Source: Schmidtea nova
Taxonomy: Eukaryota
DNA length: 64,000 nucleotides
Reading direction: 5' to 3'
Assembly (NCBI GenBank): GCA_044892505.1
Contig: CM097884.1
Coordinates: 156,178,001-156,242,000, forward strand
Both the position numbers and the translations under genes were made by a program. This document shows, piece after piece, positions 24,601 to 55,173 of the stretch. The notes under the pieces are model-generated. The model was not told the DNA's origin. It was given only the letters and a program-made list of their open reading frames with translations, and did no database searches. The number at the start of each line of letters is the position of its first letter. Position 1 is the first letter of the stretch.

Positions 24601-25567
24601 TCAACATAATTTAAATTACAGATTAATTTGTGCTTCGGTCAATATTATATTTATTTTAATATAACACGATAAATCAAACAAGTTTCTAATCCGTGCTTTT
24701 GGCACAAATATTTTTCCCAATGGTCTTGAAATGCTCTTTTTTCGTTTGGATTTTCAAGATACTCCTGCCATTATGGGTAATTAAGTTTTAATAAATGAAT
24801 ACTTTATCAAACACTAATAATAATTAAATATATAAAAAATGTTGAGTTTATTTTATATAATTTTCAGTAGGAACTTTTTCTCTGACTCCGTGTTCTCTTT
24901 AAATAATCAATGGCTTTACTCAACACAGAAATAATCTTTATTAAGACTAAAGTTTTCACAACAATTTACAATTTTTTTATCCTACGGCAGGGATCCCAAT
25001 AACAAACCTCCTCAAGTGCAACTATATTTCTTTTCACAAACGAACCGTCAAATCCTTGCACGGCTCTGTTTGAATTATTCCACTAGTTACTCTCGCTTAT
25101 GCTGGGTTCATGGAGGGGTTAGATGAAAAATGTTCTAACAATGACTAGCGATCCCTCATCCATGATCATGCATAAAATTGCAATTCTACACTCAAGCGCC
25201 CTTGATTATTTCCCTATATAATCAAGTTGGTGATGCGCAGGGTGGTTAAACAATGATGGGCAGGTGAGCACTATCGCTAGTACTACTCCCCATTTATGTT
25301 TACGGGTTCATTGCTGCCGTTAGAAGGACTTATGCTTTAATCATCTACTTGTGTATTCCGCGTTAATCTTTCAGAAAATTTATTTTTATCATTTCTCAGT
25401 CTGCGAGAAGTATTTCAACGAATGCTCGCTTAATTATTTTGTTATCTCTATTCGATATTTTGTAAACTGAATTTATACTTTTGTTCTATCTTTATCTAAT
25501 CATTGGTAAAGTTAATTAAATCAATTCAAATGAACGATAAAATTCTTAAGCCAATACAACAATTTAT

Positions 25568-26164
25568 TTAATTTCTAATGAGTTCGGTAAAAACTCCCGC
25601 CGGAGGAAAAATCTCCGTCAATAATGCCTCCTCGGTCATCTGATGTAGACCATCTACTTGGCTTTGTAATCGCTGGGCAAATAATTTTCTCTGTCTCCGC
25701 CGTTTCTGCCCAATGCGCTTGCGTTTCTGGTGCGCAGTTGCCGGTGAGGTGGTTGAATTTGCTGCAGGAGCTGTCTCATTCCGACTTTCGAGTAGATCGG
25801 CGACATCCGTGCCAATGGAATTTACCGTCTTCTTTTCGGATGTCCAAGCTTGGTACGTAACCGGACGGATTTGCTCTCTGAGCTCCTTCTCAATATATGA
25901 GGCAGTTACGGAATGGAGGCATTTTCGGAGTTCTATCTTTGTAGCCTCCCATTCCATTTGGTAATTGGCTGCAGTCTGCTGGGCGCGCTCGGTTTTACTG
26001 ATTTGCTCCTTCATTCGGGCCGGAGCAAACCAGCTTTTGCGCAAATATTCAATCTGTGCCTCTGCTTTGATCAATTGTGCCTTGAGGAGACCCAATTCCT
26101 TGTCCTGGGCTCTCCGAATCCGCCACATCTTTTCCAATTCTCTCTGCATCAAATCGGGGTTCAT
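25568..26164 (-). CDS. LTR-encoded 198-aa protein: coiled coil + Arg-rich basic motif
   Basis: Intact in both LTRs (copy at 52148-52744). It contains KRKRIGQKRRRQRK and has AG one base before the ATG. Confidence 0.7.
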   Translation of the reverse strand: MNPDLMQRELEKMWRIRRAQDKELGLLKAQLIKAEAQIEYLRKSWFAPARMKEQISKTERAQQTAANYQMEWEATKIELRKCLHSVTASYIEKELREQIRPVTYQAWTSEKKTVNSIGTDVADLLESRNETAPAANSTTSPATAHQKRKRIGQKRRRQRKLFAQRLQSQVDGLHQMTEEALLTEIFPPAGVFTELIRN

Positions 26165-26355
26165 TCTATAATTTATTCAGGATATTTACTCTATGATTTA
26201 ATTATATGAAAATTAAAATCTGATCATAGGATTATTAGGTCACGAATATGAACTATTAAAATGCGAAACAAAACAAAAAAAAATATAAATAAAAAACAAA
26301 ATTCACTAATGAACTATAATATTTTAATACAATTTCAACATTTGTTGATCAGTTT

Positions 26356-26835
26356 TCATCTTCGAAACAAACAATGCAATTCGCTGTTAATCGGTTTCTG
26401 ACGCAGACGAGCCCAGGAAAACGCAGGTTGTCCTTTCTGGCATTCCTTGCCGAACGGTTTTCGCGGTAGGAATTCGTGCAGACCCAATCGGCATAGCTCT
26501 CGACGGGGGATATGCCCCCAATAAATTACACGGCTTGTCCGTCCATCTGTGTCCTTGATCAGTACGACAAGTCGGCCAAATTTGTTCGAGTACGGCCTTT
26601 GAGAAATCGGCCAGTTCGGTCCTCCTCGATAGAGTATTTCATCGTTTCCTCCGTCCCAGATGGAAAACGGGCACTTTCGACCGAACCCCTGTCGCCACTT
26701 ATATATCTGGCAGTTGAGGGTTCGCAATATCGATGCCGGTAGATCCTTGAGCTGCGAGATATTTCCATTTCGTAGATTCCCTTGTTCCATATTCCGTAGT
26801 TGAGTTAATTGATTCATAAGTTCAGCTGTCGACAT
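26356..26835 (-). CDS. LTR-encoded 159-aa protein of unknown function
   Basis: ATG directly after an AG. The 5'-LTR copy (53041-53415) is truncated by a CGA/TGA difference. Confidence 0.6.
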   Translation of the reverse strand: MSTAELMNQLTQLRNMEQGNLRNGNISQLKDLPASILRTLNCQIYKWRQGFGRKCPFSIWDGGNDEILYRGGPNWPISQRPYSNKFGRLVVLIKDTDGRTSRVIYWGHIPRRELCRLGLHEFLPRKPFGKECQKGQPAFSWARLRQKPINSELHCLFRR

Positions 26836-28436
26836 CTATATTATATTTATTGGATATAAAATATACGAGTTAAGGGGGAAATTCGTTGCTAATTTAATTA
26901 TACTGTATATGATCACAAAAGTTACTTAAAAATAAGATTAATTTGATTTCTCTCCGCCGTGATCTACCACGGTCGGAATAAAGAGTTCATAATTAGTCCT
27001 GTGCTATATACAGCATTCAGGAATTATCACATTTAATCAAGATTTCCGCGCTATATACAGCGGTCGGATTATAACTTGGGAACCGCGCCATATACGACGA
27101 TCGGCCTATTTTTAGTAACTAATTTTAATTTGGATTTTCCGACGCATTCCATCGCGATCGGAATTTATCGATATTAAAATTTTGTAGGCGAGATGCTGAT
27201 TCCGAATGAAATCGGACTTTGGACTACGTTGGATTTTCTCATTCCAGCGAAATTATTCAAATTTATTTTATTTGTTGCTCACTGTTTTTCCATGCGGGAG
27301 GTTCCATTTCAATTCAATTTACTAAAATTTAAAGAATGAACATGCCCTACCATGGGGTGTCCCTCCTTATCAATCCGCCCTCCGCAATCTCCCTATTTGG
27401 CCCTCGACCTCCGTCCGTTGTGCAACCCAGAATTAAATAATTAGTAAATGGTCTGTACTAGACTAAAAATTCAATCAAATTTTCTAAATAAAATTCCACA
27501 TCTAAACTAAATAATAAAAAGGTTGAACCGCCATGTGAGACCCTGAGGCCCCACAACGACGACTCGGACTCCCTCGCCGCGTGAGCAGCATAGGAAGTAT
27601 AGCTATATGCATTTAAGTGTCAATAAAATAATCAATGAAAAAATAAAATAACGTTTACATATAAAATTTTAATTAAATAAAAATCATGGGTACATCATAT
27701 AAGATAAAAAATAACAAAATTACTTCCGTACTTGAATATGTGATTCCTTGTATGAAATTCGGTTTTTTCAAAAATTTACTCAAATCAAAGTTTAGTCTTG
27801 ATCTTGAGTGAAAAGTAAACGTCTATGTCTGTGATTTTTGGATCGGTATTTATACTGATCCGTCTGGTTGGATTGACCAATCAGGATCAGGCCGTCCTTC
27901 AAAGTATTTTTATTATTTTAATCTAATCTAAACATTATTTTGTTTCCTTTTCCGGTTTCTCGCTGGGTGGTCCTGATTTTCCAAGTAATTGATTAATTAT
28001 TTGTACTATTATTTTATTTAATTCTATTTTTTCTTATTTCAGGCCCCCCTTTGCGGTTGTTTACCGGTTTATTTTCAAAATTTCCTTTTACTGAAAATTT
28101 ATCAATTATTATTTGTCGTTTTATTGTTATTTTTAATTTGTTTTTCTTGCTATTTTTATTTTTATTATTTCTTTATTGTTTCATGCTTTTGTTCGTTTTA
28201 TTGTGTTTTTAGGTGATTTGGCGGGCCCAACATCACCCGGGGACCCCTAAAATTGCGTCCCGCAATTAATTATACATAAGTACTTATATTCATCATCCAT
28301 AAAAAGTTTTATAAAGTTATACATGCAAAGAAAAAATCACATAAGGTGATCGAATTTATACATATCATAAAGTTTGTCACTAAATAGTCAAAATGTAATG
28401 ATTTGTCACAATAGTTCGACGAGTTTATCATAATGT

Positions 28437-29006
28437 TTATACAATTTGTTCGATCGTCTGGCTCGCTTGGGGTTGAGTTCGGGTCCTCTCGTTGATCATT
28501 TGTAGCTCGTAGTGGGTTTGAATGTGGTTGAGATGGCTCCTTATTCGTCTTTGAGCTCGGTTATCTCGTCTGGAGGTTTGGTTGTAGATTTTCTGCTTTT
28601 GTTTTAGGATTTTTATTCTATATGAGGCAAGCAGGATTGTGATTGCGATGATAGTTGTGCTGACTGCTAGGATTATGATGATTGCTATGATCCATTTCTC
28701 TTGATATTCTATTTCAGCTTGGGATAGGCTTTTTATGGGTTCTCTACCTTCTTTCAGGATTTTTCGGGTTTCTTCTAGTTTCAGTTGTTGATTATCGAAG
28801 ATTTGTTGGATTTGACGATCTTGATTGTGGGGGAATTTCTGTCGGAATTCGTTGATTTCTTTAATTACTTCTTCGATTAGGCTGTCTACTTTCTGATAGG
28901 TTTTGTCGGGTAGAACTCGTAATTGGGTTTCGGTTAGTTGTAGATCTTCTCTCTGTAGGGTAATGGTTGTTAACCATAGGAGTGTTGCTATTGCGAGCTT
29001 TCTCAT
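28437..29006 (-). CDS. 189-aa predicted type I membrane protein
   Basis: Start MRKLAIATLLWLTTITL (signal-like), a helical ectodomain, TM WIIAIIIILAVSTTIIAITILLASY and a basic cytoplasmic tail. Confidence 0.75.
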   Translation of the reverse strand: MRKLAIATLLWLTTITLQREDLQLTETQLRVLPDKTYQKVDSLIEEVIKEINEFRQKFPHNQDRQIQQIFDNQQLKLEETRKILKEGREPIKSLSQAEIEYQEKWIIAIIIILAVSTTIIAITILLASYRIKILKQKQKIYNQTSRRDNRAQRRIRSHLNHIQTHYELQMINERTRTQPQASQTIEQIV

Positions 29007-29081
29007 TTCTTTTATACATCGGTCAATACAGCTTGACACTTTTTATTTTACATAATTTATTTACACTTGGTTTCCGCACAT

Positions 29082-30143
29082 TTATACAAGGGTTTCGTTG
29101 GGTTCGTGAAAACCTTCGTCTTGAGGTTCCACCTGATTTATGGGGAGTGGCATCCATATTACCGTGCTCCTCCACATTTCGACTTCTTCTCGGTATGTGT
29201 GGGATATCTGGATCTCTTCATCTAATAAGTATTCCAGATAGTTCGCCTGTTCTGTTAGGGTTTCAATTTGTTTTTCTAGTTCTGCCAATTTTTTCTCTCT
29301 CTCTTCCTTCTCCATCATTTCGGTTACTGCTGCTGTGATACTTGTTTCTTTTATTGGTATTGGTTTTTCTGCCAACTTCTTTCTCAGTTCTTCGTTTTCT
29401 TTTGTCAAATTTGTTATGTTCTCTTCATAGCTCTGCCTCGTTTCTTCCAGTCTTTCTTTAGTTCTTTTTAATTCTATTTTCTTCTGGGTGATCACTCCTT
29501 GATATCCATTTATGTCTCTTTTCATGTTTTCCTCCTTGTGATTCCACATTCCGGTCAGCATACCTTTTAATTGTTCTTGATTGGCTAAATCTTCTCCCAT
29601 TCTTTGTACTTGATAAGTTAATTCTTTTATTTTCTTGGCTTGTTCTCTGATGAGTTGTTGTCTTTTCTTACTCCATACTTTATTTGACGCTTCTTGACTG
29701 ATCTTTTGCCCTAATTCCTCTTTTAATTCATCGATCTCTTTAAACAGTTTCCAATCATCGCTGTACGCTGTTCGTTCTATTATCTCCCTTGCTTCCTTGT
29801 AAGAGTCTTTTGCCTCTTTCTTCCAATATCTTGCTTGTTCTGTGATTGACTGAATCTTATGGTCTGTTTTTATTTGTTGTCTATCCCTATCCTCTCGTCG
29901 CTCTTTCATCATCTCTTTGTAGTATTCGTTTTGTTGTCTTAGCAGTTTGTAGACTTCTTCTATTTTTTCTCGACTTCTTTGATTCGTTTTCTCGGCTTCT
30001 CTTAGTGCTTGGGTTTGTCTTTCCAATTCTTCCTGTTTTCGATAATAGGCATGAATCCATATCCCAATCCGCTCCATGTGATTTCTGATCATTTCGTCTT
30101 GATGTACTGTTACTTCTTGTAAGGTTACTTCTATATTTCCCAT
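29082..30143 (-). CDS. 353-aa long coiled-coil protein
   Basis: Uninterrupted ORF with E/K/Q/R-rich heptad-like sequence and the same A-rich codon style as the rest of the element. Confidence 0.8.
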   Translation of the reverse strand: MGNIEVTLQEVTVHQDEMIRNHMERIGIWIHAYYRKQEELERQTQALREAEKTNQRSREKIEEVYKLLRQQNEYYKEMMKERREDRDRQQIKTDHKIQSITEQARYWKKEAKDSYKEAREIIERTAYSDDWKLFKEIDELKEELGQKISQEASNKVWSKKRQQLIREQAKKIKELTYQVQRMGEDLANQEQLKGMLTGMWNHKEENMKRDINGYQGVITQKKIELKRTKERLEETRQSYEENITNLTKENEELRKKLAEKPIPIKETSITAAVTEMMEKEEREKKLAELEKQIETLTEQANYLEYLLDEEIQISHTYREEVEMWRSTVIWMPLPINQVEPQDEGFHEPNETLV

Positions 30144-30256
30144 TTCTATAATTACAGATAAAAAGAATATTTAATCATTTTTTATTTTTATTGTTTTTGA
30201 TTATTCGTTAATTCATATTGTTTCTATACATTTTATTTACATGGTCACTTCCTTCA

Positions 30257-31726: not shown

Positions 31727-32083
31727 CTATGGCTCATTCGTTGAATCTGGTTCCGCTTCGTTGTTTAATCTATTTATTACCCAACTCATCCATCCTTCTT
31801 CGGATCCTTCTCTTTCTCCTCGTGTTAAATGGTTTATTTCTATTGCTTGTCTTTGATTGGTGTTGCTTATCGTTTGATTTTCTCTGGTGAGTTCAGTTAT
31901 CGCTCTTTGTTGTTCTTCTATTCTGTGTAATTGTTCAAAACAGTTGTTATAACTTTCTGATAATAACATTTGTCTTTCCGCTAATTGGTTCTGTAATGAG
32001 TTGACTGTTCGTACTAATAAATCACATTGTGCTTTCCATCTCATAGCCATAGTTATTTCAGTTGTTTCGTCCTGTTCGGTCAT
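31727..32083 (-). CDS. 118-aa coiled-coil protein with C-terminal Trp-rich amphipathic segment
   Basis: Heptad-rich core, EGWMSWVINRL near the C-terminus, and AG three bases before the ATG. Confidence 0.7.
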   Translation of the reverse strand: MTEQDETTEITMAMRWKAQCDLLVRTVNSLQNQLAERQMLLSESYNNCFEQLHRIEEQQRAITELTRENQTISNTNQRQAIEINHLTRGEREGSEEGWMSWVINRLNNEAEPDSTNEP

Positions 32084-35200: not shown

Positions 35201-35640
35201 CTTGCTTCGGGCCTCTTTATTGTAATTCGTATAGTTGGTGTTGTTTGCTTATCTATTGCCTGGGGTTTTTTGTTTTCTGTTCCCTGTGTCTCTGTTCTTC
35301 CGCATTTTCCAATGATGTAATCTCCTTTGGGTGACTGTTGTATTGTCATGGCTGCTTTAGGTGTTTGGTATTTTGCACATGCGATTGTGTTGTGTGATCT
35401 TGGATGCATTTGTTTCCTAACGGTGCATATTTTGTACCAGGTATCTAGATCTAAGTCATTTATCTCTATGATTTCTTGCTCGTGTTCTGAGATTCTGCAA
35501 TCCATCGGGCTATTTTGTTCCGTGACTTTGTCCTTTTTCGACCAACATACTCGTTCGATTCCTTTTGCGTTTTTTATTTGTATTATTGCCCTTTCTTCAC
35601 ATGTCATTCCTTGACTTGGATTAATTAACGTTATAATCAT
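32209..35640 (-). CDS. 1143-aa membrane protein with about seven FN3-like Cys-containing repeats and two TM segments
   Basis: Repeats of CW...C...I..L....Y.IC...C (e.g. IEINDLDLDTWYKICTV, IQIKGLERKQTYEICLV). TMs are LIGLGILTATIPVIIALSAIW and IIGLMSIGILIAYGILTTSIIVYW. The FN3 assignment is by motif resemblance. Confidence 0.75.
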   Translation of the reverse strand: MIITLINPSQGMTCEERAIIQIKNAKGIERVCWSKKDKVTEQNSPMDCRISEHEQEIIEINDLDLDTWYKICTVRKQMHPRSHNTIACAKYQTPKAAMTIQQSPKGDYIIGKCGRTETQGTENKKPQAIDKQTTPTIRITIKRPEARVATNETERVSYQMEVLCLALILIIIKRLEEGIEIETMTITEVEDTQNTNIKCWARNDEEIGVNEIRKSRKPTTNKVIKVSEVRADKMYQLCLLEKERNKKGTTKCKTFQPGEVIKFRRRTRKRNKQIKQKLNITLEIKEIEPNVKGVCWRKYEKETNERKTPQCRTSTGATTIQIKGLERKQTYEICLVKKNDQITINDLECGIYTTSSGTRTKTITRKNKRRQRNKGKPKYTTTFKNNKQPISQEVTTKPEKKTSATLTLWKIENKTLEICWIIVQKHIRRQSRECRKTNKEIKIEKLQFNSEYEVCTIEKTDALGNQQERCETYYTPANATSKGITRKLEFRELSQTNEQMNVEKTITDPQAKWTPEEVIKEVKRKQEEREQLMRKLKGQYGIMFNQSEPIQTDKNKEIKELIGLGILTATIPVIIALSAIWLRKISPRKSTTQWLNIDNTSHGVEILEEKAREEPNKKEAKSGKLGINNKDKEIKEIKGEEKKYERRTRSLPQSSKWLGLTIILTLINREEATNLQAGIKIVNVQEVEKICWNREDEPIGKDNPLKCIIRKSDQDIIRIEGMDRGIMHRICIIGKEKKSGLPKTVVCQKYETPRLEWYKVKPTKKEIKNTIDRPATQKENTTNKPREGERSTNKTRERISPPQECVCIALILAMSKRFDRGIIIEQMAITIRKTSSNKLCWGTYNEPRKEYQVQTSDESQTNKEIEIQEIQMNEEGSICIWEKGIQEDQPGIEKCKTFQKGEILKFDEEELTKTERTLTITGLDQTVKGICWTKHNPEGEEDNLTHCKEIGNKEKVELKKMEVNRTYAICTFTREGSEKPECGLYQISEKLQQQIEPGNMENRTKENNVKQLLNRHWSTQEVMNKVKNQVQKEKKPEAQTQNEIKANQNKIKATNRGKTIIGLMSIGILIAYGILTTSIIVYWRYRKRNKATAIQWPDIKIMKQRIEIPEEIQQKFQRRTKGKEFWKQIEDEERYEEKTIMMV

Positions 35641-43394: not shown

Positions 43395-43714
43395 GATTGG
43401 TCTCTTTCCGTTCCTGGCATGACAATTGCTGAATAATGTCCTCTCCCGCAGTAGAATGCGAATCTCGTCTTCTGCACTTTACATTCATTCACCATTGTCT
43501 TTATGAGTTCTGCTTCTTGATACACGTGGTACCATTGTTCCTTTTTAATCTTTTGCAACTCTACTGGAGTCGCATCTTTGCATTGCTCCGTACCTCTCAA
43601 TGAATACTTTTCTCCTAACTTCATTTGGTCGCAATCAAACACTTCGAATGCTGTTGCGCTATCGGTGCTAATCATCCAAATCAACATCATCATTATTATA
43701 GCACTCAGATTCAT
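41760..43714 (-). CDS. Class III fusion-type envelope glycoprotein (chuvirus G / herpes gB-like), split by a -1 shift at ~43400
   Basis: Signal MNLSAIIMMMLIWMISTDSATA|FEVFDC, then YSL...C, VYQ, FYCG..HY, VAG...CQG, NNK...LYYDL..NDC, GEAMYVYIC, VQPVTRII, GIYS..DL and TM WGRFLIFGQMMAGILGVILII. Family recognised from memory of the motif series. Confidence 0.82.
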
Positions 43715-45550: not shown

Positions 45551-48205
45551 CTAAATTCGCCAATTTCGATAAATTTCTACTATTTGTTGTAATTTGCGCA
45601 CAACTTCTTTCCGTCGTTCCCGTTCTTTTTTCTCGTCTTTAGCAGTTTCTCTTGGTGTATCGTCCATTCTGCTAACGTGGATGGTTTGGTGATTATCCCA
45701 TATACCGATTTTATATAGTCGTCTCTCATCGTGATCCCATAATACATGTTCGTTGTATTGTATGATTATGTCGTCTTCCCATTCGTCTTCTGGTTCTCTT
45801 TGCACTAGTGTCTCGTTGATGACATTTATTAATTCTTTAATGGTGCAGTCCGCTACCACTTCGATTTCTTTGGTGTCTTCATTAGGTAACTCTACTGAAA
45901 TTTTTAGATCTGTTATTTTCCCTTGTCTGAACATTGTTTTTCCCATTTTTGCGATTAATTTATCGTGTGAGATTTGTGACCATCTCGTGTGACTTGTGTC
46001 ACGTATGCACTCAATACATCGTTTCAATTTCTCGTATTCGCTTCTCATTAACTCTTTTCTATGTTTTTTGACTTGTGGTATGATTTGTTCTATCAGGGAA
46101 TTTAGATTCTTTCGTAAGACTCGTTCTTTCTCGTATTCTAACCGAGGTTTTATTCTCCTTTCGAAGCACGTGTTTGCCTCCCTTGCAACTTCTTGTAGGT
46201 TTTCTTCTTCCTTTTCATCACATATTGATAATAGGGTTATTTCTCCTGGCCATATACCTGTTTCTACTAAGTGCGTTCTTTTCTTTACGAGTCTATTCTG
46301 CGAATAGATGAATTTGTTTTTATATGAACTCCCTAGTCTGTCCTCTACCCATCTGTAGATATCATCTGTAAATGGAGTTTTGATCCAGATTCTTGGTGTA
46401 GATGTATTTATTATTATTGAGATGGTGTAATTGAGAAGTGGTTCCTCTATTAATTTCCCTACGTATCGATTCAACATGTCTACTTCCCGGTCTTGTAACC
46501 ATTCTTTGTAGTTCATTTGTAATAATGCTTTCATGAATTTCCGATATTGTTTCTTGTCCATGAACTCTTCGTTATATATTACTTCTAGCGAGTTATCTAG
46601 TAATTTCTGGATTTCATCTACTTTTATCTGTGTAGGTTCTGAGGTCTTTATTACTTCTCTCTCTTTATTTTCGTCTTCGGATTCGTTTAATATGTCTCCT
46701 GCTAGGCTACTGATATCACTATCTTCTTCTTCATCGGAAAACTCTCTGGTGGTATTTCTTAACATATTAATATGTGCTGTTTGGTTCGTTTCTCCTTGTA
46801 TATTCTCCGTTGGTTCTGGTTCGTTTTTGTCAATTTCTGGTGTTGGTTCACTCTTGTCCTCTATTACTTCGACTTTTTCCATTTTCTTTCCCAACTCGTC
46901 TATCTCTTTTAAACGTCTTCTTATCATTTTTCCTTCAAATATTCGCCGGATTCGGGTTTCGTGACGTATTGGTGGTGGTATTTCTTCTGGTTCTATTTCT
47001 TTAATTCTCATCACATTTCTTTTTGTTTCTACTACTCCCATGTTTTCCCATATATCCGTTAATTTCAATTTTACTGATGGTGCATCTCCTATTTGTAAGA
47101 ACGCTTCTCTGGGCAGCTTCGTTACTCCTGGAATCATCTGGTTTACTTTGTTGAATAATACTTTCACTTCTTCTTTTACGTTATATTGAAACCTAAACAC
47201 ATGGTCGTTGGGCATTATTACCATCATTCCTTTTTTCCAAATTTTCCTTCTCTCTTCCTGGTTTATCTCAGTTTCCCCTTCCTTTTTTATTTCTTTTTCT
47301 ACTTCTTCATCTTTTTGTACTATCTCTTTTCGACTTTCGTTGTCGGCTGGATTTGGGTCTATCGAATTCATTTCTAGTGTGGTTTCTTTCTCGCGAGTGT
47401 CTGTTTGGTTTGTTGCTCTTAGCATGTTAATTCTTAGAGGTTGTCGTTCTCTTTCTTTCTGTTTTTGTTCATCCTCTCTTTGTATTCTTGCCCATTCCTG
47501 AGCGTGTCGTGCCTGACTTTCTCGATTCAATCGTTCGTTTTCGCTTTCTATTTTTCTCATCATGCTAATTTGCTGTTGATTGGTTTGCGGATTTCCTCTC
47601 GTCGTATTGTTTATAAGTTCCGTCAATCTTTGGACTTCTTGCATTAAATGTATTTCTTTGGGGGTGGTTTTGTTCTGATTATTGTTATTATTGACTTGTT
47701 GGTTCCCATAATCTGGTCGGTTTACGGTATTTGCTTGATTTCCGTAATTTGGTCGGTTCCCATTACTCTGCCAGTTTCCTCGTTGATTACTTTTTTGTCC
47801 GCAATTTCTTGAATAGTGACCAGGTCGTCCGCAATTAAAACAGATTATTGTAGAACATCTGCTTTCCGAGTGTCCTTTAACTCCACATTTTCCGCAATTC
47901 AAATTTTGATAGCATTCTTGCTGCCAGTGTCCTAACTTCCCGCATGTTTTACATTGTTTTGTTTGTCTTTGAGGGTTGTAATTGTTTTGGCTTTCAAAGT
48001 TCTGCACTTAATTTCCTTCATTCCTTCGTTGAGGGGGTGGTCGGTTTAATTGTTGCGAATTTGGAATGTGATTGTTGAGATTTACCTCTGGTTCGGTTTG
48101 TGCTGTGTCCATGGCTAAATAAATTCTGCCCTCACTTCCTATCATATGCAATTCAAATCGGTTAGCTGTTTCTAACGATTGATCTATGGTTTGCATCCTT
48201 GACAT
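45551..48205 (-). CDS. Gag C-terminal part: three CCHC knuckles and extension with ubiquitin-like domain(s); in-frame TAA at 48008-48010
   Basis: CKTCGKLGHWQQEC, CGKCGVKGHSESRC and CFNCGRPGHYSRNC (~47810-47955). UBL-like LKISVELPNEDTKEIEV...TIKEL...L...GIWDNHQTIHV (~45670-45910). Confidence 0.85.
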
Positions 48206-49245
48206 CCTACTTGCGCTCTTATGTCGGGTCTTCTTAATCCTCCTATGAAGATAGCTGCCATTAACTCCTCGTTTATTGGACCTCCATCCTTGAATACCGA
48301 TTTTGCTAATTTTTTCAGTTCGCTCGCGTATACCGCATTAGATTCATTCATCTTTTGTTTCCTCATTGAAAATTCTATGAATGCCTCGCTTAGCACTTTA
48401 TTTATTCCAAATGTTTGTTGGAAAAAGTCCTTTATCGCTGTCCAGCTTGTAGGTGGATTGGTACCATTTTTCGCTTCCAGATATAGGTCCAATGCACTAT
48501 CTTTCAAATATAACTGAATTCTGCTTACCGTTGTTTCAGCTTTCCACTTGCATACCTCCACGAATATGCCAAATTCTTTTAAAAAGGTTTCTAATTTACT
48601 CGCATCTCCGTTAAACGGTTCTCCTGAAAATTTATCCTTTATTTCTTCTCTTGGTTCACCCATTTCAATTCCGCTGTCTTGAGTTATTTTACTTTCGTTT
48701 CCTCTTGTTTCTAGTTCGTTGTTATGTTCGTCTTCCGTTTTACTCGAGCTTGAATCGCTTTCTGTTTCTCTTATTCCTTCGTTATCTGATATTATACTTT
48801 CGTTATCACTCGCGTTGATTTCTATCTCTGGTTCTACCTCGTTTTCTACTTCTTCGATATTATCGTTGTTAGTTTCGTCGATTTCTCCTTCTTGTTCTAT
48901 CTCGTGTTCTATTTCTTCGATATTATCGTTGTTAGTTTCGTCGCTCTCTATTTCACTTGCTTGGTTCTCCTTGGGTTCGGCTTGGTTTTCTTTGTTACTT
49001 GAGCTGTTGCTTATTATTGACAATTTATCGTTTTCGGTAATCGATTTATCTCTTATTATTTTCCTCGATTTACTCCCTTGTGGGTTATCTTTGCCGGCTT
49101 TCTGCTTTTTTGTTGATTTTGTTGTAGTACTGGTTTTGTCTTTTTTGTTAATGTTGCTACCGACTTTCTTTTCCGTTGGCTTTACTACGACACTCTTTGC
49201 TCCTTTTCTCAAGGGGATTACTTTTGTATACTCAATTTTCTTGTC
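48184..49245 (-). CDS. Gag N-terminal/capsid part, no nearby ATG
   Basis: Basic then acidic low-complexity N-terminus. Capsid motifs FNGDASKLETFLKEF...LYLKDSALDLY...SW..IK..F..TF and MHR-like KQKMNESNAVYASELKKL, then FIGGL. Confidence 0.85.
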   Translation of the reverse strand, partial: DKKIEYTKVIPLRKGAKSVVVKPTEKKVGSNINKKDKTSTTTKSTKKQKAGKDNPQGSKSRKIIRDKSITENDKLSIISNSSSNKENQAEPKENQASEIESDETNNDNIEEIEHEIEQEGEIDETNNDNIEEVENEVEPEIEINASDNESIISDNEGIRETESDSSSSKTEDEHNNELETRGNESKITQDSGIEMGEPREEIKDKFSGEPFNGDASKLETFLKEFGIFVEVCKWKAETTVSRIQLYLKDSALDLYLEAKNGTNPPTSWTAIKDFFQQTFGINKVLSEAFIEFSMRKQKMNESNAVYASELKKLAKSVFKDGGPINEELMAAIFIGGLRRPDIRAQVGCQGCKP

Positions 49246-49824
49246 CTATCTCTTATCGTGTTCTGATTCTTCTTGCTTGATTGATTGATTTGATTGATTT
49301 GTATATCTAAAATACAAAGGTCCTCAACGATACATTATTGTTATCGTCGCGCTTTTATTCCCTTTCTTTCGGGATTACTTATTACTGGGTTTTCATTATT
49401 TCCCAATTCCCAGATTCCCCTTTATTTTTAGTCTATTTAAATTATCTATAGACTGGTCACAATTATCTATTTACGTCGTAATAATTATCTATGTTTTATC
49501 AAATCGATTACTTTTCCCACAGTTTCCCAATTTATTGGTCGCTCGAGCGCTCTAATTCCCTGAGTCTTTCTGACTCGTTTACCATTATTTTATCATCTCT
49601 ATTCATTATTCCCTGCTAGCAATCGTTTTACTCATTCTGCCGGTTGCTCCGGTCAGCTCAAATCTCTACTATTCTCCTTGCATGCTTTACTTAAGGTTGC
49701 ATAATCAGCTTTACTCGCATTTTCTTAACTACTGGTGCGCACTACTCTAAATCTCGTCGACGATTATACTATGGGTCTATATTCCCCCTGTTACTATTTA
49801 TCCGGATATCTCTATAATTCACTA

Positions 49825-50085
49825 TGGCTCTTCTGGCCTCAATTTTATATCTCACATGGCTCTATTGGCCTCATTTTACTATCTCAAATGGCTCTATTGG
49901 CCTCAATTTAATCTCTCAAATGGCTCTATTGGCCTCAATTTAATCTCTCAAATGGCTCTATTGGCCTCAATTTAATCTCTCAAATGGCTCTATTGGCCTC
50001 AATTTAATCTCTCAAATGGCTCTCGTGGCCTCAATTTAATCTCTCATAACGCCTAGCTAGGTCATTCACTATGGCTCATTGGCCT
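49825..50085 (-). repeat. 32-bp tandem array (~7 units) containing CCAAT boxes
   Basis: Unit TGGCTCTATTGGCCTCAATTTAATCTCTCAAA at 49857, 49889, 49921, 49953 and 49985 plus degenerate units. The minus strand reads GGCCAATAG. Confidence 0.95.
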
Positions 50086-50086
50086 C

Positions 50087-50409
50087 AACCCTTTTTTTCA
50101 AGGGACAAACCGCTAATAACCCTTTGTTTCAAGGGACAAATCTCCTAACCCTTTGTTTCAAGGGACAAATCTCATAACCCTTTGTTTCAAGGGACAAATC
50201 TCCTAACCCTTTGTTTCAAGGGACAAATCTCATAACCCTTTGTTTCAAGGGACAAATCTCATAACCCTTTGTTTCAAGGGACAAATCTCTTAACCCTTTG
50301 TTTCAAGGGACAAATCTCATAACCCTTTGTTTCAAGGGACAAATCTCCTAACCCTTTGTTTCAAGGGACAAATCTCATAACCCTTTGTTTCAAGGGACAA
50401 ATCTCCTAA
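50087..50409. repeat. 29-bp tandem array (10 units + 1 degenerate)
   Basis: Unit AACCCTTTGTTTCAAGGGACAAATCTC(A/C/T)T with an internal CCCTT/AAGGG inverted repeat and no spacers. Confidence 0.97.
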
Positions 50410-50885
50410 CTTTACTTAACCGGTTAATCACAATTCCCTACTTCGCTAGCGATTAAAATTTCTCAGCTGAGTTATAACTACTTCTATGCGAGCTGACTAT
50501 GCACCTTTTATTCTCTCAGAATTGTCGTTTATCTCTGTATTCTATCATAACTATTCCTGATCAGTCTGCTTCAACTTTTTATTTATTTTTCTCTATGCGC
50601 GCTTTACTCCATCAAGATTTCCCTATCTCTCTCCCCAACCAAAATATACAAAAAGATCGCGTTGGTCCATTAATGCAGGATGTGGTGATCAATCACATCA
50701 CAAAAACTTTCCAACATTTGCGATGGGCCCCTTTCTATACACCTTGAATAAGTTGATCAATCGGTACCTCCCAATGGATTCCTATCGGACTACTTTGCAG
50801 TAGCTCAAAAATTATTTATATATGACAATTGTACCCATGATTTCCTTATTAATAAATCAATAAAATTCCATTCAAATTTCATTTA

Positions 50886-51347
50886 TTATAAATACACAAT
50901 AATTTTATCGTCAATCATCAGGTTGCACATAGGACATAGGTCGCGCTTGCTGGCACATATTTTACAAAAACGAAAATGTCCACAAGGTAAAAACATAATT
51001 TGTATCTCGGTATCCTCGCATATATAGCACTGTCGGTATTTTTTCGCTGCTTCTACCCCTTGCGCCCTCCATCGATTGTATGTTGGGGTTAATTGTTGTC
51101 CTATTTGCCTGAACTTAATGTTTAGTTCTGCATCTTCTAATCGTGCTCTGTACCATTTGTAGCGGGTCTTTATGTCGATTTTACTTGTTCTTTCTGTTAT
51201 CTTTATTAATTCCTCTGTTTCCTCAGTCTGTGTTGTGGGTTCCTGAAATTCAATTTCTCTAAATCGGTTTATTTTCTTGCCAATCGTTTCTAATGTTTCG
51301 CTTTCTGTGTTGAGAAATTCTTCGATTTCCTTCAGTTTTTCCTCCAT
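50886..51347 (-). CDS. 153-aa protein with C-terminal IAP-type RING finger
   Basis: CYICEDTEIQIMFLPCGHFRFCKICASKRDLCPMC...I..KI.VY* matches the C-terminal RING pattern of IAP/MDM2-class E3 ligases. No BIR motif seen. Confidence 0.9.
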   Translation of the reverse strand: MEEKLKEIEEFLNTESETLETIGKKINRFREIEFQEPTTQTEETEELIKITERTSKIDIKTRYKWYRARLEDAELNIKFRQIGQQLTPTYNRWRAQGVEAAKKYRQCYICEDTEIQIMFLPCGHFRFCKICASKRDLCPMCNLMIDDKIIVYL

Positions 51348-51656
51348 TTACTGAATAAATAATTGTTTTTAACTTTGTTATTTTTATCATTTCTAAAGTA
51401 GTAATATGTTTCGTTTTGTATCTTTTGATATTTATCAATCCTCCCCGTGTTTCCGAAAATTGTCGTCCCGACAAATTATGCATGCATTTTGATTTTTAAA
51501 TTCACTTTTGTTCACTGTCGTGTTGTTATTTAATTTTTATACAATAATTTACATTTAATTATAACCTTTCTGTTTTTTATTAAATTAATTGACCTGAGCA
51601 TTTTAAACCTCTCTGCAGATTTTACGTTTACATTTTTCCGATAAAACGAAGTTGAT

Positions 51657-51673
51657 TCCCGGCTGAGCCCCCA
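51657..51673 (-). promoter_or_regulatory. Primer-binding site, tRNA-Pro
   Basis: Minus strand TGGGGGCTCAGCCGGGA, 6 nt from the LTR end, closely resembles the known tRNA-Pro PBS TGGGGGCTCGTCCGGGAT. Confidence 0.88.
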
Positions 51674-52147
51674 AATTTATGCTGGGTTCATGGAGGGGTT
51701 AGATGAAAAATGTTCTAACAATGACTAGGGATCCCTCATCCATGATCATGCATAAAATTGCAATTCTACACTCAAGCGCCCTTGATTATTTCCCTATATA
51801 ATCAAGTTGGTGATGCGCAGGGTGGTTAAACAATGATGGGCAGGTGAGCACTATCGCTAGTACTACTCCCCATTTATGTTTACGGGTTCATTGCTGCCGT
51901 TAGAAGGACTTATGCTTTAATCATCTACTTGTGTATTCCGCGTTAATCTTTCAGAAAATTTATTTTTATCATTTCTCAGTCTGCGAGAAGTATTTCAACG
52001 AATGCTCGCTTAATTATTTTGTTATCTCTATTCGATATTTTGTAAACTGAATTTATACTTTTGTTCTATCTTTATCTAATCATTGGTAAAGTTAATTAAA
52101 TCAATTCAAATGAACGATAAAATTCTTAAGCCAATACAACAATTTAT

Positions 52148-52744
52148 TTAATTTCTAATGAGTTCGGTAAAAACTCCCGCCGGAGGAAAAATCTCCGTCA
52201 ATAATGCCTCCTCGGTCATCTGATGTAGACCATCTACTTGGCTTTGTAATCGCTGGGCAAATAATTTTCTCTGTCTCCGCCGTTTCTGCCCAATGCGCTT
52301 GCGTTTCTGGTGCGCAGTTGCCGGTGAGGTGGTTGAATTTGCTGCAGGAGCTGTCTCATTCCGACTTTCGAGTAGATCGGCGACATCCGTGCCAATGGAA
52401 TTTACCGTCTTCTTTTCGGATGTCCAAGCTTGGTACGTAACCGGACGGATTTGCTCTCTGAGCTCCTTCTCAATATATGAGGCAGTTACGGAATGGAGGC
52501 ATTTTCGGAGTTCTATCTTTGTAGCCTCCCATTCCATTTGGTAATCGGCTGCAGTCTGCTGGGCGCGCTCGGTTTTACTGATTTGCTCCTTCATTCGGGC
52601 CGGAGCAAACCAGCTTTTGCGCAAATATTCAATCTGTGCCTCTGCTTTGATCAATTGTGCCTTGAGGAGACCCAATTCCTTATCCTGGGCTCTCCGAATC
52701 CGCCACATCTTTTCCAATTCTCTCTGCATCAAATCGGGGTTCAT
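52148..52744 (-). CDS. 5'-LTR copy of the 198-aa Arg-rich-motif protein
   Basis: Identical to 25568-26164 except N/D at residue 67. Confidence 0.65.
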   Translation of the reverse strand: MNPDLMQRELEKMWRIRRAQDKELGLLKAQLIKAEAQIEYLRKSWFAPARMKEQISKTERAQQTAADYQMEWEATKIELRKCLHSVTASYIEKELREQIRPVTYQAWTSEKKTVNSIGTDVADLLESRNETAPAANSTTSPATAHQKRKRIGQKRRRQRKLFAQRLQSQVDGLHQMTEEALLTEIFPPAGVFTELIRN

Positions 52745-52935
52745 TCTATAATTTATTCAGGATATTTACTCTATGATTTAATTATATGAAAATTAAAATC
52801 TGATCATAGGATTATTAGGTCACGAATATGAACTATTAAAATGCGAAACAAAACAAAAAAATATATAAATAAAAAACAAAATTCACTAATGAACTATAAT
52901 ATTTTAATACAATTTCAACATTTGTTGATCAGTTT

Positions 52936-53415
52936 TCATCTTCGAAACAAACAATGCAATTCGCTGTTAATCGGTTTCTGACGCAGACGAGCCCAGGAAA
53001 ACGCAGGTTGTCCTTTCTGGCATTCCTTGCCGAACGGTTTTCACGGTAGGAATTCGTGCAGACCCAATCGGCATAGCTCTCGACGGGGGATATGCCCCCA
53101 ATAAATTACACGGCTTGTCCGTCCATCTGTGTCCTTGATCAGTACGACAAGTCGGCCAAATTTGTTCGAGTACGGCCTTTGAGAAATCGGCCAGTTCGGT
53201 CCTCCTCGATAGAGTATTTCATCGTTTCCTCCGTCCCAGATGGAAAACGGGCACTTTCGACCGAACCCCTGTCGCCACTTATATATCTGGCAGTTGAGGG
53301 TTCGCAATATCGATGCCGGTAGATCCTTGAGCTGCGAGATATTTCCATTTCGTAGATTCCCTTGTTCCATATTCCGTAGTTGAGTTAATTGATTCATAAG
53401 TTCAGCTGTCGACAT
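52936..53415 (-). pseudogene. 5'-LTR copy of the 159-aa ORF, premature TGA at 53041-53043
   Basis: A single-base difference from the 3' LTR copy turns CGA into TGA. Confidence 0.6.
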
Positions 53416-55173
53416 CTATATTATATTTATTGGATATAAAATATACGAGTTAAGGGGGAAATTCGTTGCTAATTTAATTATACTGTATATGATCACAAAA
53501 GTTACTTAAAAATAAGATTAATTTGATTTCTCTCCGCCGTGATCTACCACGGTCGGAATAAAGAGTTCATAATTAGTCCTGTGCTATATACAGCATTCAG
53601 GAATTATCACATTTAATCAAGATTTCCGCGCTATATACAGCGGTCGGATTATAACTTGGGAACCGCGCCATATACGACGATCGGCCTATTTTTAGTAACT
53701 AATTTTAATTTGGATTTTCCGACGCATTCCATCGCGATCGGAATTTATCGATATTAAAATTTTGTAGGCGAGATGCTGATTCCGAATGAAATCGGACTTT
53801 GGACTACGTTGGATTTTCTCATTCCAGCGAAATTATTCAAATTTATTTTATTTGTTGCTCACTGTTTTTCCATGCGGGAGGTTCCATTTCAATTCAATTT
53901 ACTAAAATTTAAAGAATGAACATGCCCTACCATGGGGTGTCCCTCCTTATCAATCCGCCCTCCGCAATCTCCCTATTTGGCCCTCGACCTCCGTCCGTTG
54001 TGCAACCCAGAATTAAATAATTAGTAAATGGTCTGTACTAGACTAAAAATTCAATCAAATTTTCTAAATAAAATTCCACATCTAAACTAAATAATAAAAA
54101 GGTTGAACCGCCATGTGAGACCCTGAGGCCCCACAACGACGACTCGGACTCCCTCGCCGCGTGAGCAGCATAGGAAGTATAGCTATATGCATTTAAGTGT
54201 CAATAAAATAATCAATGAAAAAATAAAATAACGTTTACATATAAAATTTTAATTAAATAAAAATCATGGGTACATCATATAAGATAAAAAATAACAAAAT
54301 TACTTCCGTACTTGAATATGTGATTCCTTGTATGAAATTCGGTTTTTTCAAAAATTTACTCAAATCAAAGTTTAGTCTTGATCTTGAGTGAAAAGTAAAC
54401 GTCTATGTCTGTGATTTTTGGATCGGTATTTATACTGATCCGTCTGGTTGGATTGACCAATCAGGATCAGGCCGTCCTTCAAAGTATTTTTATTATTTTA
54501 ATCTAATCTAAACATTATTTTGTTTCCTTTTCCGGTTTCTCGCTGGGTGGTCCTGATTTTCCAAGTAATTGATTAATTATTTGTACTATTATTTTATTTA
54601 ATTCTATTTTTTCTTATTTCAGGCCCCCCTTTGCGGTTGTTTACCGGTTTATTTTCAAAATTTCCTTTTACTGAAAATTTATCAATTATTATTTGTCGTT
54701 TTATTGTTATTTTTAATTTGTTTTTCTTGCTATTTTTATTTTTATTATTTCTTTATTGTTTCATGCTTTTGTTCGTTTTATTGTGTTTTTAGGTGATTTG
54801 GCGGGCCCAACACTTACAATTGTAGAGGTCTCGAATGTTTATAATCAAATCAGAAGTCAAATTTTGTGATTAGATTTTTAATAAAAATTACTAATATATC
54901 CACTGAGCAATTACACCAAATATCACAAATAGTTTATTGATCTTTTATGAATTTATTTTTATAAATGTGTCCTACTGTATGCATGTTCTTTAGTGCGTTC
55001 TATATGTAAATGTTTCTTGATAAAGGTGTTGGACGTTTTTGTACTGTTCATATGATTTAATTTTCTCGCAGAATTACCGTTTGAGATATTTTTTGTCGCA
55101 AAAGTTTTTGGTTTCAAAAAATTTGTGGGCACTTCAATTACTTTTTTATCCCTTTATATTGTTGGGTTATTGG

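What the first reader, a model, noticed from the sequence alone, without database searches (positions are those of the whole stretch)
25100..54812. Young 29.7-kb enveloped Gypsy element carrying an apoptosis/innate-immunity gene set
Seen: complete LTR-PBS-gag-env-pol-LTR structure, TSD and near-identical LTRs, plus TRAF, IAP-type RING, Bcl-2-like, ankyrin, ubiquitin-like and FN3 membrane modules. Established: large DNA viruses use vBcl-2, IAP, ankyrin (IkB-like) and E3-ligase genes against cell death and NF-kB/TNF signalling, while typical Gypsy elements are 5-10 kb; the closest size precedents I know are plant Ogre and planarian Burro elements. Inference: this behaves as a complex, possibly infectious invertebrate retrovirus with a host-control toolkit.
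Basis: partly seen in the sequence, partly recalled or inferred. Interest (0 to 1): 0.97.

Follow-up and report, generated by a model that had tools for sequence, protein, structure and literature searches.

The report
Known giant planarian-type Burro retroelement copy
The 29.7-kb element is real and recently inserted, but it matches the published Burro family of giant Gypsy retrovirus-like elements of planarians, whose cell-death and ubiquitin gene set is already described, and this copy's main gene is interrupted three times.

Summary
The structure is there. Two 3,133-bp LTRs differ at 5 positions, end in TG..CA, and are flanked by a 4-bp target duplication. A tRNA-like primer site is followed by gag, env and pol on the minus strand. 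Tools confirm a full TRAF homologue, an IAP-type RING (no BIR), ankyrin repeats, a mononegavirus-type fusion glycoprotein between gag and pol, and a membrane protein with seven Ig/FN3-like repeats. The Bcl-2-like and ubiquitin-like modules could not be confirmed here.

Jurka (2007), Grohme et al. (2018) and Arkhipova and Yushenova (2019, PMC6431247) describe Burro/GYPSM1 of Schmidtea mediterranea with the same layout: three CCHC knuckles, MATH/TRAF, SUMO-like, BCL2-like, in-frame env, ankyrin, IAP/RING and Smc. A 2026 study, cited in PMC13465017, reports an anti-apoptotic role for the Burro1 IAP region.

This copy's gag-env-pol gene carries two frame changes and one in-frame stop as assembled, so infectivity is unsupported for it. 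The source species and sibling copies could not be reached. The only candidate new detail is the module after pol: an FN3-like membrane ORF and a stand-alone TRAF.

The parts
25096..25099 (.). Target-site duplication (CTTA), left copy
   Evidence: the same 4 bases directly flank both outer LTR ends
25100..28232 (-). 3' LTR in element orientation, 3,133 bp, TG..CA ends
   Evidence: 99.84% identical to the other LTR (5 mismatches, 0 gaps)
25568..26164 (-). 198-aa sense ORF inside the LTR (second copy at 52148-52744, 1 residue different); no known family
   Evidence: no Pfam hit and no exact record
26356..26835 (-). 159-aa sense ORF inside the LTR (shorter in the other LTR); no known family
28233..28252 (-). 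Short G-rich tract next to the 3' LTR, in the position of a polypurine tract (inferred)
   Evidence: read directly from the sequence; not tested further
28437..29039 (-). 200-aa ORF: coiled-coil region followed by one transmembrane segment (28605-28703) and a basic tail; function unknown
   Evidence: (no Pfam hit)
29082..30143 (-). 353-aa charged coiled-coil ORF; probably the 'Smc'-type hit reported for Burro
   Evidence: only a weak Filament hit; PMC6431247
30257..31633 (-). Stand-alone full-length TRAF homologue: RING, TRAF zinc fingers, coiled coil, MATH/TRAF-C
   Evidence: MATH_2 6e-21, zf-TRAF 3e-8; TRAF3 2e-23, TRAF6 RING-ZnF 3e-13; 23-27% identity to animal TRAF2/4
31727..32083 (-). 118-aa ORF, no assignable family
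32209..35640 (-). 1,143-aa ORF made of two tandem halves. It has seven Ig/FN3-like beta-sandwich repeats with invariant C-W..C..C, and transmembrane segments at 33886-33972 and 32389-32472.
   Evidence: alignment A1; pLDDT 73; FN3, monobody, Ig and pilin sandwiches, best E 5e-3
35676..49212 (-). gag-accessory-env-pol-ankyrin polyprotein gene, 4,512 codons. It is broken as assembled by 2 frame changes (one in gag, one in env) and 1 in-frame stop (in the accessory stretch between the zinc knuckles and the Bcl-2-like candidate).
   Evidence: published Burro1 ORF1 is a single 4,873-aa frame (PMC6431247)
48232..48513 (-). Gag capsid-like domain (Retrotrans_gag, weak)
   Evidence: 4.5e-4; gag of metagenome relatives, 25-33% identity
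47801..47953 (-). Three CCHC zinc knuckles (nucleocapsid)
46988..47260 (-). Ubiquitin-like candidate 1 (weak)
   Evidence: FERM_N 0.14
45623..45940 (-). Ubiquitin-like candidate 2 (weak)
   Evidence: Ubiquitin_4 0.1
44837..45124 (-). Ubiquitin-like candidate 3 (weak)
   Evidence: profile of the three against a UBX domain, E 0.5
43712..44254 (-). Bcl-2-like candidate: all-helical, with a BH2-like stretch at the position expected from Bcl-xL; not confirmed
   Evidence: E 1.4; no Pfam hit; 0 hits; pLDDT 51; uninformative; a BCL2-like motif is reported for the family in PMC6431247
41871..43720 (-). Env: internal signal-like hydrophobic segment, ectodomain of the mononegavirus/chuvirus-type fusion glycoprotein family, and a C-terminal membrane anchor (41871-41984); carries one frame change
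   Evidence: PF24664, 3e-58 and 6e-7; contiguous in relatives
41037..41309 (-). Retroviral aspartyl protease
   Evidence: RVP 2e-7
39897..40373 (-). Reverse transcriptase
   Evidence: RVT_1 4.5e-37
39321..39710 (-). RNase H
   Evidence: RT_RNaseH 2e-37
38427..38996 (-). Integrase (H2C2 zinc domain and catalytic core)
   Evidence: 3.6e-20, 7.6e-11
37335..37667 (-). Ankyrin repeat block 1 in the post-integrase extension
36366..36728 (-). Ankyrin repeat block 2
   Evidence: DARPin/ankyrin matches, 1e-11
49824..50410 (.). Two tandem arrays in the leader (32 bp x7 and 29 bp x11)
   Evidence: tandem repeats are drawn in the published Burro maps (legend quoted)
50886..51347 (-). 153-aa ORF upstream of gag with a C-terminal IAP-type RING; no BIR
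   Evidence: zf-C3HC4_3 1.2e-11; XIAP, cIAP1/2 and ML-IAP RINGs, 1.5e-9
51654..51673 (-). Primer-binding-site-like 20-mer starting TGG, 6 nt after the 5' LTR; its complement reads like a tRNA 3' end with CCA
   Evidence: read directly from the sequence; the tRNA is not identified and no tRNA gene is in the window
51680..54812 (-). 5' LTR in element orientation
54813..54816 (.). Target-site duplication (CTTA), right copy

Best explanation
This is one recently integrated copy of a Burro-type giant Ty3/Gypsy endogenous retrovirus-like element, in an AT-rich genome that is probably that of a dugesiid planarian.

Shown:
- LTRs, target duplication, a tRNA-like primer site and PR-RT-RH-IN in Gypsy order.
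- A fusion glycoprotein of the mononegavirus/chuvirus type lying between gag and pol within the same long gene.
- Accessory genes on the same strand, with the same A-rich sense-strand bias as pol.

Inferred:
- The element is transcribed from the 5' LTR and reverse-transcribed from the tRNA primer site.
- Its giant polyprotein is threaded through the ER membrane. An internal signal-like segment would put the Env ectodomain in the lumen, and the Env anchor would return protease, RT, integrase and ankyrin to the cytosol. The viral protease and signal peptidase would cut it.
- The IAP-type RING, TRAF homologue, ankyrin blocks and the reported Bcl-2-like/SUMO-like modules act on host ubiquitin, TRAF and cell-death signalling to keep the expressing cell alive.
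- The Ig/FN3-like membrane protein is a surface or adhesion factor.

As assembled, this copy cannot make the full polyprotein, because it has 2 frame changes and 1 stop. The kind of element and its gene set are already published.
For: - LTR pair, target duplication and termini.
- Primer site.
- Domain order and env.
- Three CCHC knuckles, as reported for S. mediterranea Burro: and PMC6431247.
- TRAF. IAP-type RING. Ankyrin.
- Signal and anchor segments.
- The sense strand is uniformly A-rich from 28 to 50 kb. Plus-strand AT skew is -0.30 to -0.53, strongest over the accessory ORFs. It is about -0.05 to -0.12 in the two windows lying wholly inside an LTR and within about 0.1 of zero in most of the left flank.
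- No internal long repeats suggest a nested insertion.
- The nearest pol relatives (42-49% identity) also carry PF24664 env upstream of PR in one ORF, and some also have CCHC and ankyrin.
- Literature: Burro/GYPSM1 has the same domain set, total length above 30 kb, thousands of copies, and env in frame between gag and pol. Burro1 is expressed and controlled by piRNA (PMC8532177). The Burro1 RING+BIR region is reported to protect stem cells from caspase-mediated apoptosis (Lee et al. 2026, as summarised in PMC13465017). GAG-ENV-POL Gypsy elements occur in Platyhelminthes (PMC13524379).
Against: - The source species could not be identified, and no Burro reference sequence was available, so nucleotide-level membership is untested.
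- The layout differs from the published text description of Burro1. Here TRAF/MATH is a separate ORF after pol rather than inside ORF1. The RING ORF lacks a BIR. A dUTPase-like domain between PR and RT was not detected.
- The Bcl-2-like and ubiquitin-like modules were not confirmed here.
- The total length of 29.7 kb is slightly below the '>30 kb' quoted for Burro.
- No sibling copy was reachable, so conservation of the accessory ORFs within the family rests on the literature and on composition.
- All functional steps are inference.
Confidence: 0.82

Rival explanations
1. An undescribed Burro-like subfamily, or a Burro relative in another flatworm species. It would have its own arrangement: a RING-only ORF before gag, a full TRAF after pol, a tandem Ig/FN3-like membrane protein and LTR-borne ORFs. 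This would make it a new member or variant rather than a copy of a described family.
For: The TRAF position, the absence of BIR and the undetected dUTPase-like domain all differ from the text description of Burro1 and of the Dugesia tigrina element. The FN3-like ORF is not mentioned in PMC6431247. No exact or close protein is present in 15 billion sequences.
Against: Burro-2, -3 and -4 are described as carrying the same motifs plus BCL2-like, and their maps show several ORFs. I could not see those maps or sequences. The protein collections evidently lack planarian transposon ORFs altogether, so the absence of hits says little.
Confidence: 0.3
2. One reading: a currently infectious, complex invertebrate retrovirus represented by this intact provirus.
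For: The LTRs are near-identical. An env with signal and anchor segments is present. The accessory ORFs are long and open. The family is reported as active and abundant (PMC8532177).
Against: The gag-env-pol gene of this copy has 2 frame changes and 1 stop, one of the frame changes inside env, whereas env is contiguous in relatives. There is no evidence of particles or horizontal spread. Intragenomic retrotransposition explains the copy equally well.
Confidence: 0.12
3. The three interruptions are long-read assembly errors, and the copy is in fact coding-intact.
For: With only 5 LTR differences in 3.1 kb, about 20 substitutions would be expected over 13.5 kb. Three disabling changes among them are somewhat many. 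AT-rich, homopolymer-rich genomes assembled from noisy long reads often carry indel errors (general knowledge).
Against: One of the three is a stop codon rather than an indel. No read data are available here.
Confidence: 0.3
4. The accessory genes do not belong to the element. They would be host genes or another insertion caught between two LTRs, or a misassembly.
For: Typical Gypsy elements are 5-10 kb. More distant gag-env-pol relatives in metagenomes lack the RING, TRAF and FN3-like ORFs.
Against: All the ORFs are intronless, on the same strand, and share the element's strong A-rich sense bias. There are no internal LTRs, terminal repeats or duplications. The same domains are published as part of Burro. 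The target duplication and matching LTRs define a single insertion.
Confidence: 0.04

Closest known systems
[quoted passage not shown] 2018; Arkhipova and Yushenova 2019, PMC6431247)
   Same: Size class of about 30 kb with an internal region of 23-25 kb. Gag with three CCHC knuckles. Env of mononegavirus type between gag and pol in the same gene. PR-RT-RH-IN followed by ankyrin. MATH/TRAF, IAP-type RING, Smc-like coiled coil, a reported BCL2-like and SUMO-like module, tandem repeats in the map, and an AT-rich host.
   Different: Here TRAF is a separate ORF after pol, the RING ORF has no BIR, and no dUTPase-like domain was detected. A 1,143-aa Ig/FN3-like membrane ORF is present that the review does not mention. 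Sequence identity to the library entries was not testable.
GAG-ENV-POL env-carrying Ty3/gypsy elements of Platyhelminthes, Nematoda and Bryozoa (PMC13524379; Sacco et al. 2022 as cited there)
   Same: Env placed between gag and pol, and a Gypsy pol. The env belongs to the glycoprotein group that the paper calls HSV/gB-type, and it describes the chuvirus-like glycoprotein as structurally gB-like.
   Different: Those elements are catalogued by their three core ORFs, and no cell-death or ubiquitin accessory set is discussed. The fold class of this env was not tested here.
Unnamed metagenome polyproteins P0016-P0036 (ENA/JGI), for example P0021 of 4,057 aa
   Same: 42-49% identity over PR-IN. PF24664 env lies upstream of PR in one ORF. 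Gag and CCHC are present, and ankyrin in P0021.
   Different: No RING, TRAF, FN3-like or coiled-coil ORFs at the two loci examined. The hosts are unknown.
Mosquito BEL/Pao elements with a captured chuvirus-like glycoprotein (Dezordi et al. 2020, PMC7642597)
   Same: An LTR retroelement that acquired a glycoprotein of the Jingchuvirales/Mononegavirales type.
   Different: A different retroelement superfamily, an env not fused into the polyprotein, and no accessory toolkit.
Anti-apoptotic and NF-kB-modulating genes of large DNA viruses (baculovirus IAP, viral Bcl-2, poxvirus ankyrin proteins)
   Same: The same kinds of host-derived modules (IAP-type RING, ankyrin, possibly Bcl-2-like), presumably used to keep the host cell alive. 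This is a resemblance in function only.
   Different: A retroelement rather than a DNA virus. The IAP-like ORF lacks BIR, and no function was tested here.
Ogre elements of plants and foamy-like fish endogenous retroviruses with accessory ORFs (as reviewed in PMC6431247)
   Same: Oversized LTR retroelements with extra ORFs.
   Different: Ogre's size comes largely from its LTRs, and it has one or two unknown ORFs. The fish elements reach about 17 kb. Neither carries this gene set.

Membership tests
Ty3/Gypsy (Metaviridae) LTR retrotransposon | Paired LTRs with TG..CA ends and a 4-6 bp target duplication | tested here: met
Ty3/Gypsy (Metaviridae) LTR retrotransposon | Pol domain order PR-RT-RNase H-IN | tested here: met
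   positions along one open frame
Ty3/Gypsy (Metaviridae) LTR retrotransposon | Primer-binding site complementary to a host tRNA 3' end | tested here: inconclusive
   a 20-mer starts TGG and has a tRNA-like complement. No tRNA is available to match.
Burro / GYPSM1 | Giant size (internal region up to 25 kb, total above 30 kb) | tested here: inconclusive
   29,713 bp in total and 23,447 bp internal. This is in the range but just under the quoted total.
Burro / GYPSM1 | Gag with retrotrans_gag followed by three CCHC knuckles | tested here: met
Burro / GYPSM1 | Env homologous to mononegavirus fusion glycoproteins, located between gag and PR in the polyprotein | tested here: met
   (PF24664, 3e-58); interrupted by one frame change in this copy
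Burro / GYPSM1 | MATH_TRAF_C, IAP/RING, ankyrin and Smc-like modules | tested here: met
   The coiled coil is weak only. TRAF lies in a different position from that described for Burro1.
Burro / GYPSM1 | BCL2-like, Ubi2/SUMO-like and dUTPase-like modules | tested here: inconclusive
   only sub-threshold signals, and nothing for dUTPase
Burro / GYPSM1 | Nucleotide similarity to the Burro1-4/GYPSM1 reference entries; host is S. mediterranea or another dugesiid | not testable with these tools
   No reference sequence or source genome is reachable. Protein collections lack these ORFs.
IAP (inhibitor of apoptosis) proteins | At least one BIR domain | tested here: not met
   no BIR by Pfam and no BIR signature in any frame of the window
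IAP (inhibitor of apoptosis) proteins | C-terminal RING of the IAP type | tested here: met
TRAF family | N-terminal RING, TRAF zinc fingers, coiled coil and C-terminal MATH/TRAF-C | tested here: met
Bcl-2 family | Helical bundle with BH motifs, recognisable by profile or fold | tested here: inconclusive
   The region is predicted all-helical (pLDDT 51). A BH2-like stretch matches Bcl-xL at the equivalent position with E 1.4. There is no Pfam hit and no homologue among 1.84 billion representatives. Foldseek is uninformative.
Fibronectin type III domain | Seven-strand beta sandwich matching FN3 profiles | tested here: inconclusive
   The sandwich fold is supported but not distinguished from Ig or pilin folds. 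Pfam Fn3_Dep-1 scores 17.6 bits against a cut-off of 26.
Env-carrying GAG-ENV-POL Gypsy elements ('errantivirus'-like, PMC13524379) | Uninterrupted gag, env and pol ORFs flanked by LTRs | tested here: not met
   The order and LTRs are met. The ORFs of this copy are interrupted three times.

The most novel reading that the evidence does not exclude
The part of the element after pol may be a module that has not been described for Burro or any other retroelement. It comprises a tandem Ig/FN3-like type-I membrane protein, a complete stand-alone TRAF, a coiled-coil protein, a tail-anchored protein and two ORFs carried inside the 3.1-kb LTRs. The hydrophobic segment ahead of Env may serve both as Env signal peptide and as membrane anchor of the preceding Bcl-2-like domain. 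This would make the copy a new Burro-like variant with a second surface protein.
Probability: 0.22. Interest if true: 0.45.

Novelty: already known. Interest (0 to 1): 0.22.

Why it matters
Burro-type elements are unusual: retrovirus-like elements three to five times normal size that carry cell-death and ubiquitin-pathway genes. They are a recognised example of host-transposon interplay in planarian stem cells. That importance belongs to the published family, not to this finding.

This copy adds a clean, dated insertion with exact boundaries. It also adds domain-level checks and a description of the post-pol ORFs, including fold-level evidence for Ig/FN3-like repeats. This could be useful for annotation, but it does not open a new question.

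Tried and rejected
1. Sibling copies. Exact look-ups of 11 ORFs, a word-based protein search with TRAF, a metagenome scan with TRAF and a viral-contig scan with env all found nothing close. The within-family conservation test could not be run.

2. Source species. No tRNA or Rfam hit. The host Kae1/OSGEP exons are too short for the length window of the protein search. The species is left as an inference from AT-richness and Burro-like features.

3. Bcl-2. Pfam, PDB sequences, 1.84 billion representatives, single-sequence AlphaFold and Foldseek left it inconclusive.

4. Ubiquitin-like. Pfam and a three-segment profile against PDB gave sub-threshold signals only.

5. Env against PDB sequences and against proteins of 300-950 aa: no hits. 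Only the Pfam family and the long polyproteins match.

6. A profile of the FN3-like repeats against PDB sequences gave nothing. Compared with the ORF at 56399-57088 it gave a probability of 0.8%, so this was rejected.

7. The element against the rest of the window. There is no nucleotide match. The only protein-level match is an older, unrelated Gypsy pol fragment.

8. A nested insertion or host-gene capture between LTRs was rejected on composition and the absence of internal repeats.

9. The bacterial promoter/terminator scan of the LTR is not meaningful for a eukaryote.

10. Grohme et al. 2018 and Lee et al. 2026 are not held. They are cited only through papers that summarise them.

Full report
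**What is there.** A direct repeat of 3,136 bp with 5 mismatches and no gaps brackets the region. The 4-bp duplication CTTA lies on both outer sides. Every long ORF is on the minus strand, so 51680-54812 is the 5' LTR. Six bases inside it lies a 20-mer starting TGG, whose complement reads like the 3' end of a tRNA with CCA. The tRNA itself could not be identified. A repeat of this length and identity, with a matching target duplication, is not a chance feature.

**Gene content, in element order.**
- A 153-aa ORF whose C-terminus is an IAP-type RING. Pfam zf-C3HC4_3 scores 1.2e-11. The best PDB matches are the XIAP, cIAP1/2 and ML-IAP RINGs at 1.5e-9. There is no BIR, and no BIR signature in any frame of the window.
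- Two tandem arrays in the leader.
- One very long gene of 4,512 codons (35676-49212). Along it Pfam finds Retrotrans_gag (weak), three CCHC knuckles, a fusion glycoprotein of family PF24664 (Monjiviricetes_fusion, 3e-58), retroviral protease, RT, RNase H, integrase and ankyrin repeats.
- Env is preceded by a signal-like hydrophobic segment and followed by a membrane anchor.
- After pol come five more ORFs: a 1,143-aa ORF, a 118-aa ORF, a full TRAF homologue, a 353-aa coiled-coil ORF and a 200-aa coiled-coil ORF with one membrane segment.
- The TRAF homologue has MATH at 6e-21 and zf-TRAF at 3e-8. It matches TRAF3 TRAF-C at 2e-23 and the TRAF6 RING/zinc fingers at 3e-13. It is 23-27% identical to animal TRAF2/4.
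- Each LTR also holds two sense ORFs with no relatives.

**The less certain modules.**
- The 1,143-aa ORF consists of two tandem halves with seven repeats of about 90 aa that share invariant C-W..C..C. Using the seven repeats as their own alignment, AlphaFold gives a seven-strand beta sandwich (pLDDT 73). Foldseek finds FN3 domains and monobodies, but also Ig V domains and pilins, at E of 5e-3 or worse. 'Ig/FN3-like membrane protein' is therefore justified, and 'FN3' as a family is not.
- The Bcl-2-like candidate lies just ahead of Env. It has no Pfam hit and no homologue among 1.84 billion representative proteins. A low-confidence all-helical model (pLDDT 51) gives meaningless fold matches. 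The only hint is a BH2-like stretch aligned to Bcl-xL at the equivalent position, at E 1.4.
- Three ubiquitin-like candidates share a small motif but reach only E 0.1-0.5.
- No dUTPase-like domain was detected between PR and RT.

**State of this copy.** The gag-env-pol gene is not one open frame as assembled. It carries two frame changes, one in gag and one in env. It also carries one in-frame stop, in the accessory stretch between the knuckles and the Bcl-2-like candidate. In the nearest relatives, env is contiguous in one frame. None of the three sits at the classical gag/pol boundary, so programmed recoding is unlikely. Assembly error cannot be excluded without reads. The LTRs differ at 0.16% of sites, so the insertion is young in relative terms. 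I give no absolute date, because no substitution rate is known for the host.

**Do the accessory genes belong to the element?** Yes, on present evidence.
- They are intronless and co-oriented.
- They share the element's marked A-rich sense strand. Plus-strand AT skew is -0.42 to -0.53 over 28-36 kb and -0.30 to -0.44 over pol. It is about -0.05 to -0.12 in the two windows lying wholly inside an LTR and within about 0.1 of zero in most of the left flank.
- There are no internal LTRs or other long repeats.
- The direct test, presence in sibling copies, could not be run. The source genome's element ORFs are absent from every collection I could query.
- More distant gag-env-pol relatives from metagenomes (42-49% identity in pol) lack the RING, TRAF and FN3-like ORFs. 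The toolkit is therefore specific to a narrower lineage.

**Comparison with what is known.** Arkhipova and Yushenova (PMC6431247) summarise Jurka 2007 and Grohme et al. 2018. Burro (GYPSM1, Burro1-4) of Schmidtea mediterranea exceeds 30 kb, with internal regions up to 25 kb, and occurs in thousands of copies.
- It encodes Gag with three CCHC knuckles, MATH_TRAF_C, a SUMO-like domain and a BCL2-like motif.
- It has an env 'in-frame between gag and pol' with hits to mononegavirus fusion glycoproteins.
- It then encodes PR, a dUTPase-like domain, RT, RH and IN, plus ankyrin, BIR/IAP, RING-type and Smc motifs and further accessory ORFs.
- The authors already propose integrated proviruses that 'meddle' with apoptosis and ubiquitination.

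Burro1 is expressed in a tissue-specific way and is controlled by piRNA (PMC8532177). Lee et al. 2026 is summarised in PMC13465017. That summary reports that the Burro1 RING+BIR region protects stem cells from caspase-mediated apoptosis, and that the family expanded in Dugesiidae and Geoplanidae. GAG-ENV-POL Gypsy elements with gB-type Env in Platyhelminthes, Nematoda and Bryozoa are catalogued in PMC13524379.

**What differs and what remains open.** Compared with the text description of Burro1:
- TRAF is a stand-alone ORF after pol rather than part of ORF1.
- The RING ORF has no BIR.
- The dUTPase-like domain was not found.
- The total length is 29.7 kb.

These points fit either one of the less-documented subfamilies (Burro-2 to -4) or an undescribed relative. 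I could not decide, because no reference sequence was available. The host is inferred, not shown, to be a dugesiid planarian. The evidence is 26-40% GC in the flanks, the three-knuckle Gag and the Burro-like content.

**Mechanism.** The retroelement architecture and the identity of the Env, TRAF, RING and ankyrin modules are shown. The rest is inference:
- LTR-driven transcription and tRNA-primed reverse transcription.
- A membrane-threaded polyprotein in which the internal signal places Env in the ER lumen and the anchor returns PR-RT-IN-Ank to the cytosol.
- Accessory proteins that act on host TRAF, ubiquitin and cell-death signalling to keep expressing cells alive.
- An Ig/FN3-like surface protein.

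**Verdict.** This is a real, well-delimited, young but interrupted copy of an already described kind of element. Interest is low for novelty, although the family itself is remarkable.

2. The script output lists the lengths of its open stretches. Both indirectly locate the interruptions.

Noticed in passing
window 21100-24500: A 274-bp satellite with about 12 head-to-tail copies, 96-100% alike in the centre of the array. It ends about 600 bp from the element's 3' LTR.
   Followed up: no
window 4879-5370 and 20595-21059 (+): Two large exons of a host Kae1/OSGEP gene (Pfam TsaD 9e-43 and 6e-27). They are separated by about 15 kb of intron packed with transposon ORFs and the N gap at 18490-18681. 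The element sits about 4 kb downstream of the last exon.
   Followed up: partly
window 13822-15567 (-) and 6022-6612 (-): An intact 581-aa hAT-type transposase-like ORF and an ISXO2-like DDE transposase ORF, both inside the OSGEP intron.
   Followed up: partly
window 1624-3045 (+) and 373-864 (-): Pieces of a FLYWCH and MULE transposase, and a DUF7041 gag-like ORF.
   Followed up: partly
window 57614-58945 (-): An older, degraded RNase H-integrase fragment of a different Gypsy family, 29-35% amino-acid identity to the element's pol. The adjacent ORF at 56399-57088 is not related to the FN3-like repeats.
   Followed up: yes
window 25568-26835 and 52148-53415 (-): Two sense-strand ORFs inside each 3.1-kb LTR (198 aa, and 159 aa that is shorter in the other LTR). 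They have no homologue or Pfam family. LTR-borne coding capacity would be unusual if real.
   Followed up: partly
window 43646-43720 (-): The hydrophobic segment directly ahead of the Env ectodomain follows the Bcl-2-like candidate. It sits where cellular Bcl-2 proteins carry their tail anchor, so one segment might serve both roles (inference).
   Followed up: no
L001 and L002 (ENA ERZ25039515 contigs): Metagenome contigs carrying gag-env-pol relatives. L002 also holds fragments of bacterial-type ABC/MacB/YknX genes, and L001 a DNA_pol_B_2 (Maverick-like) ORF next to the element. The host is unknown, and chimeric assembly or horizontally acquired genes are both possible.
   Followed up: no
window 61931-62275 (+): An ORF made of a repeated peptide unit of about 22 residues, reflecting a local tandem DNA repeat.
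   Followed up: no
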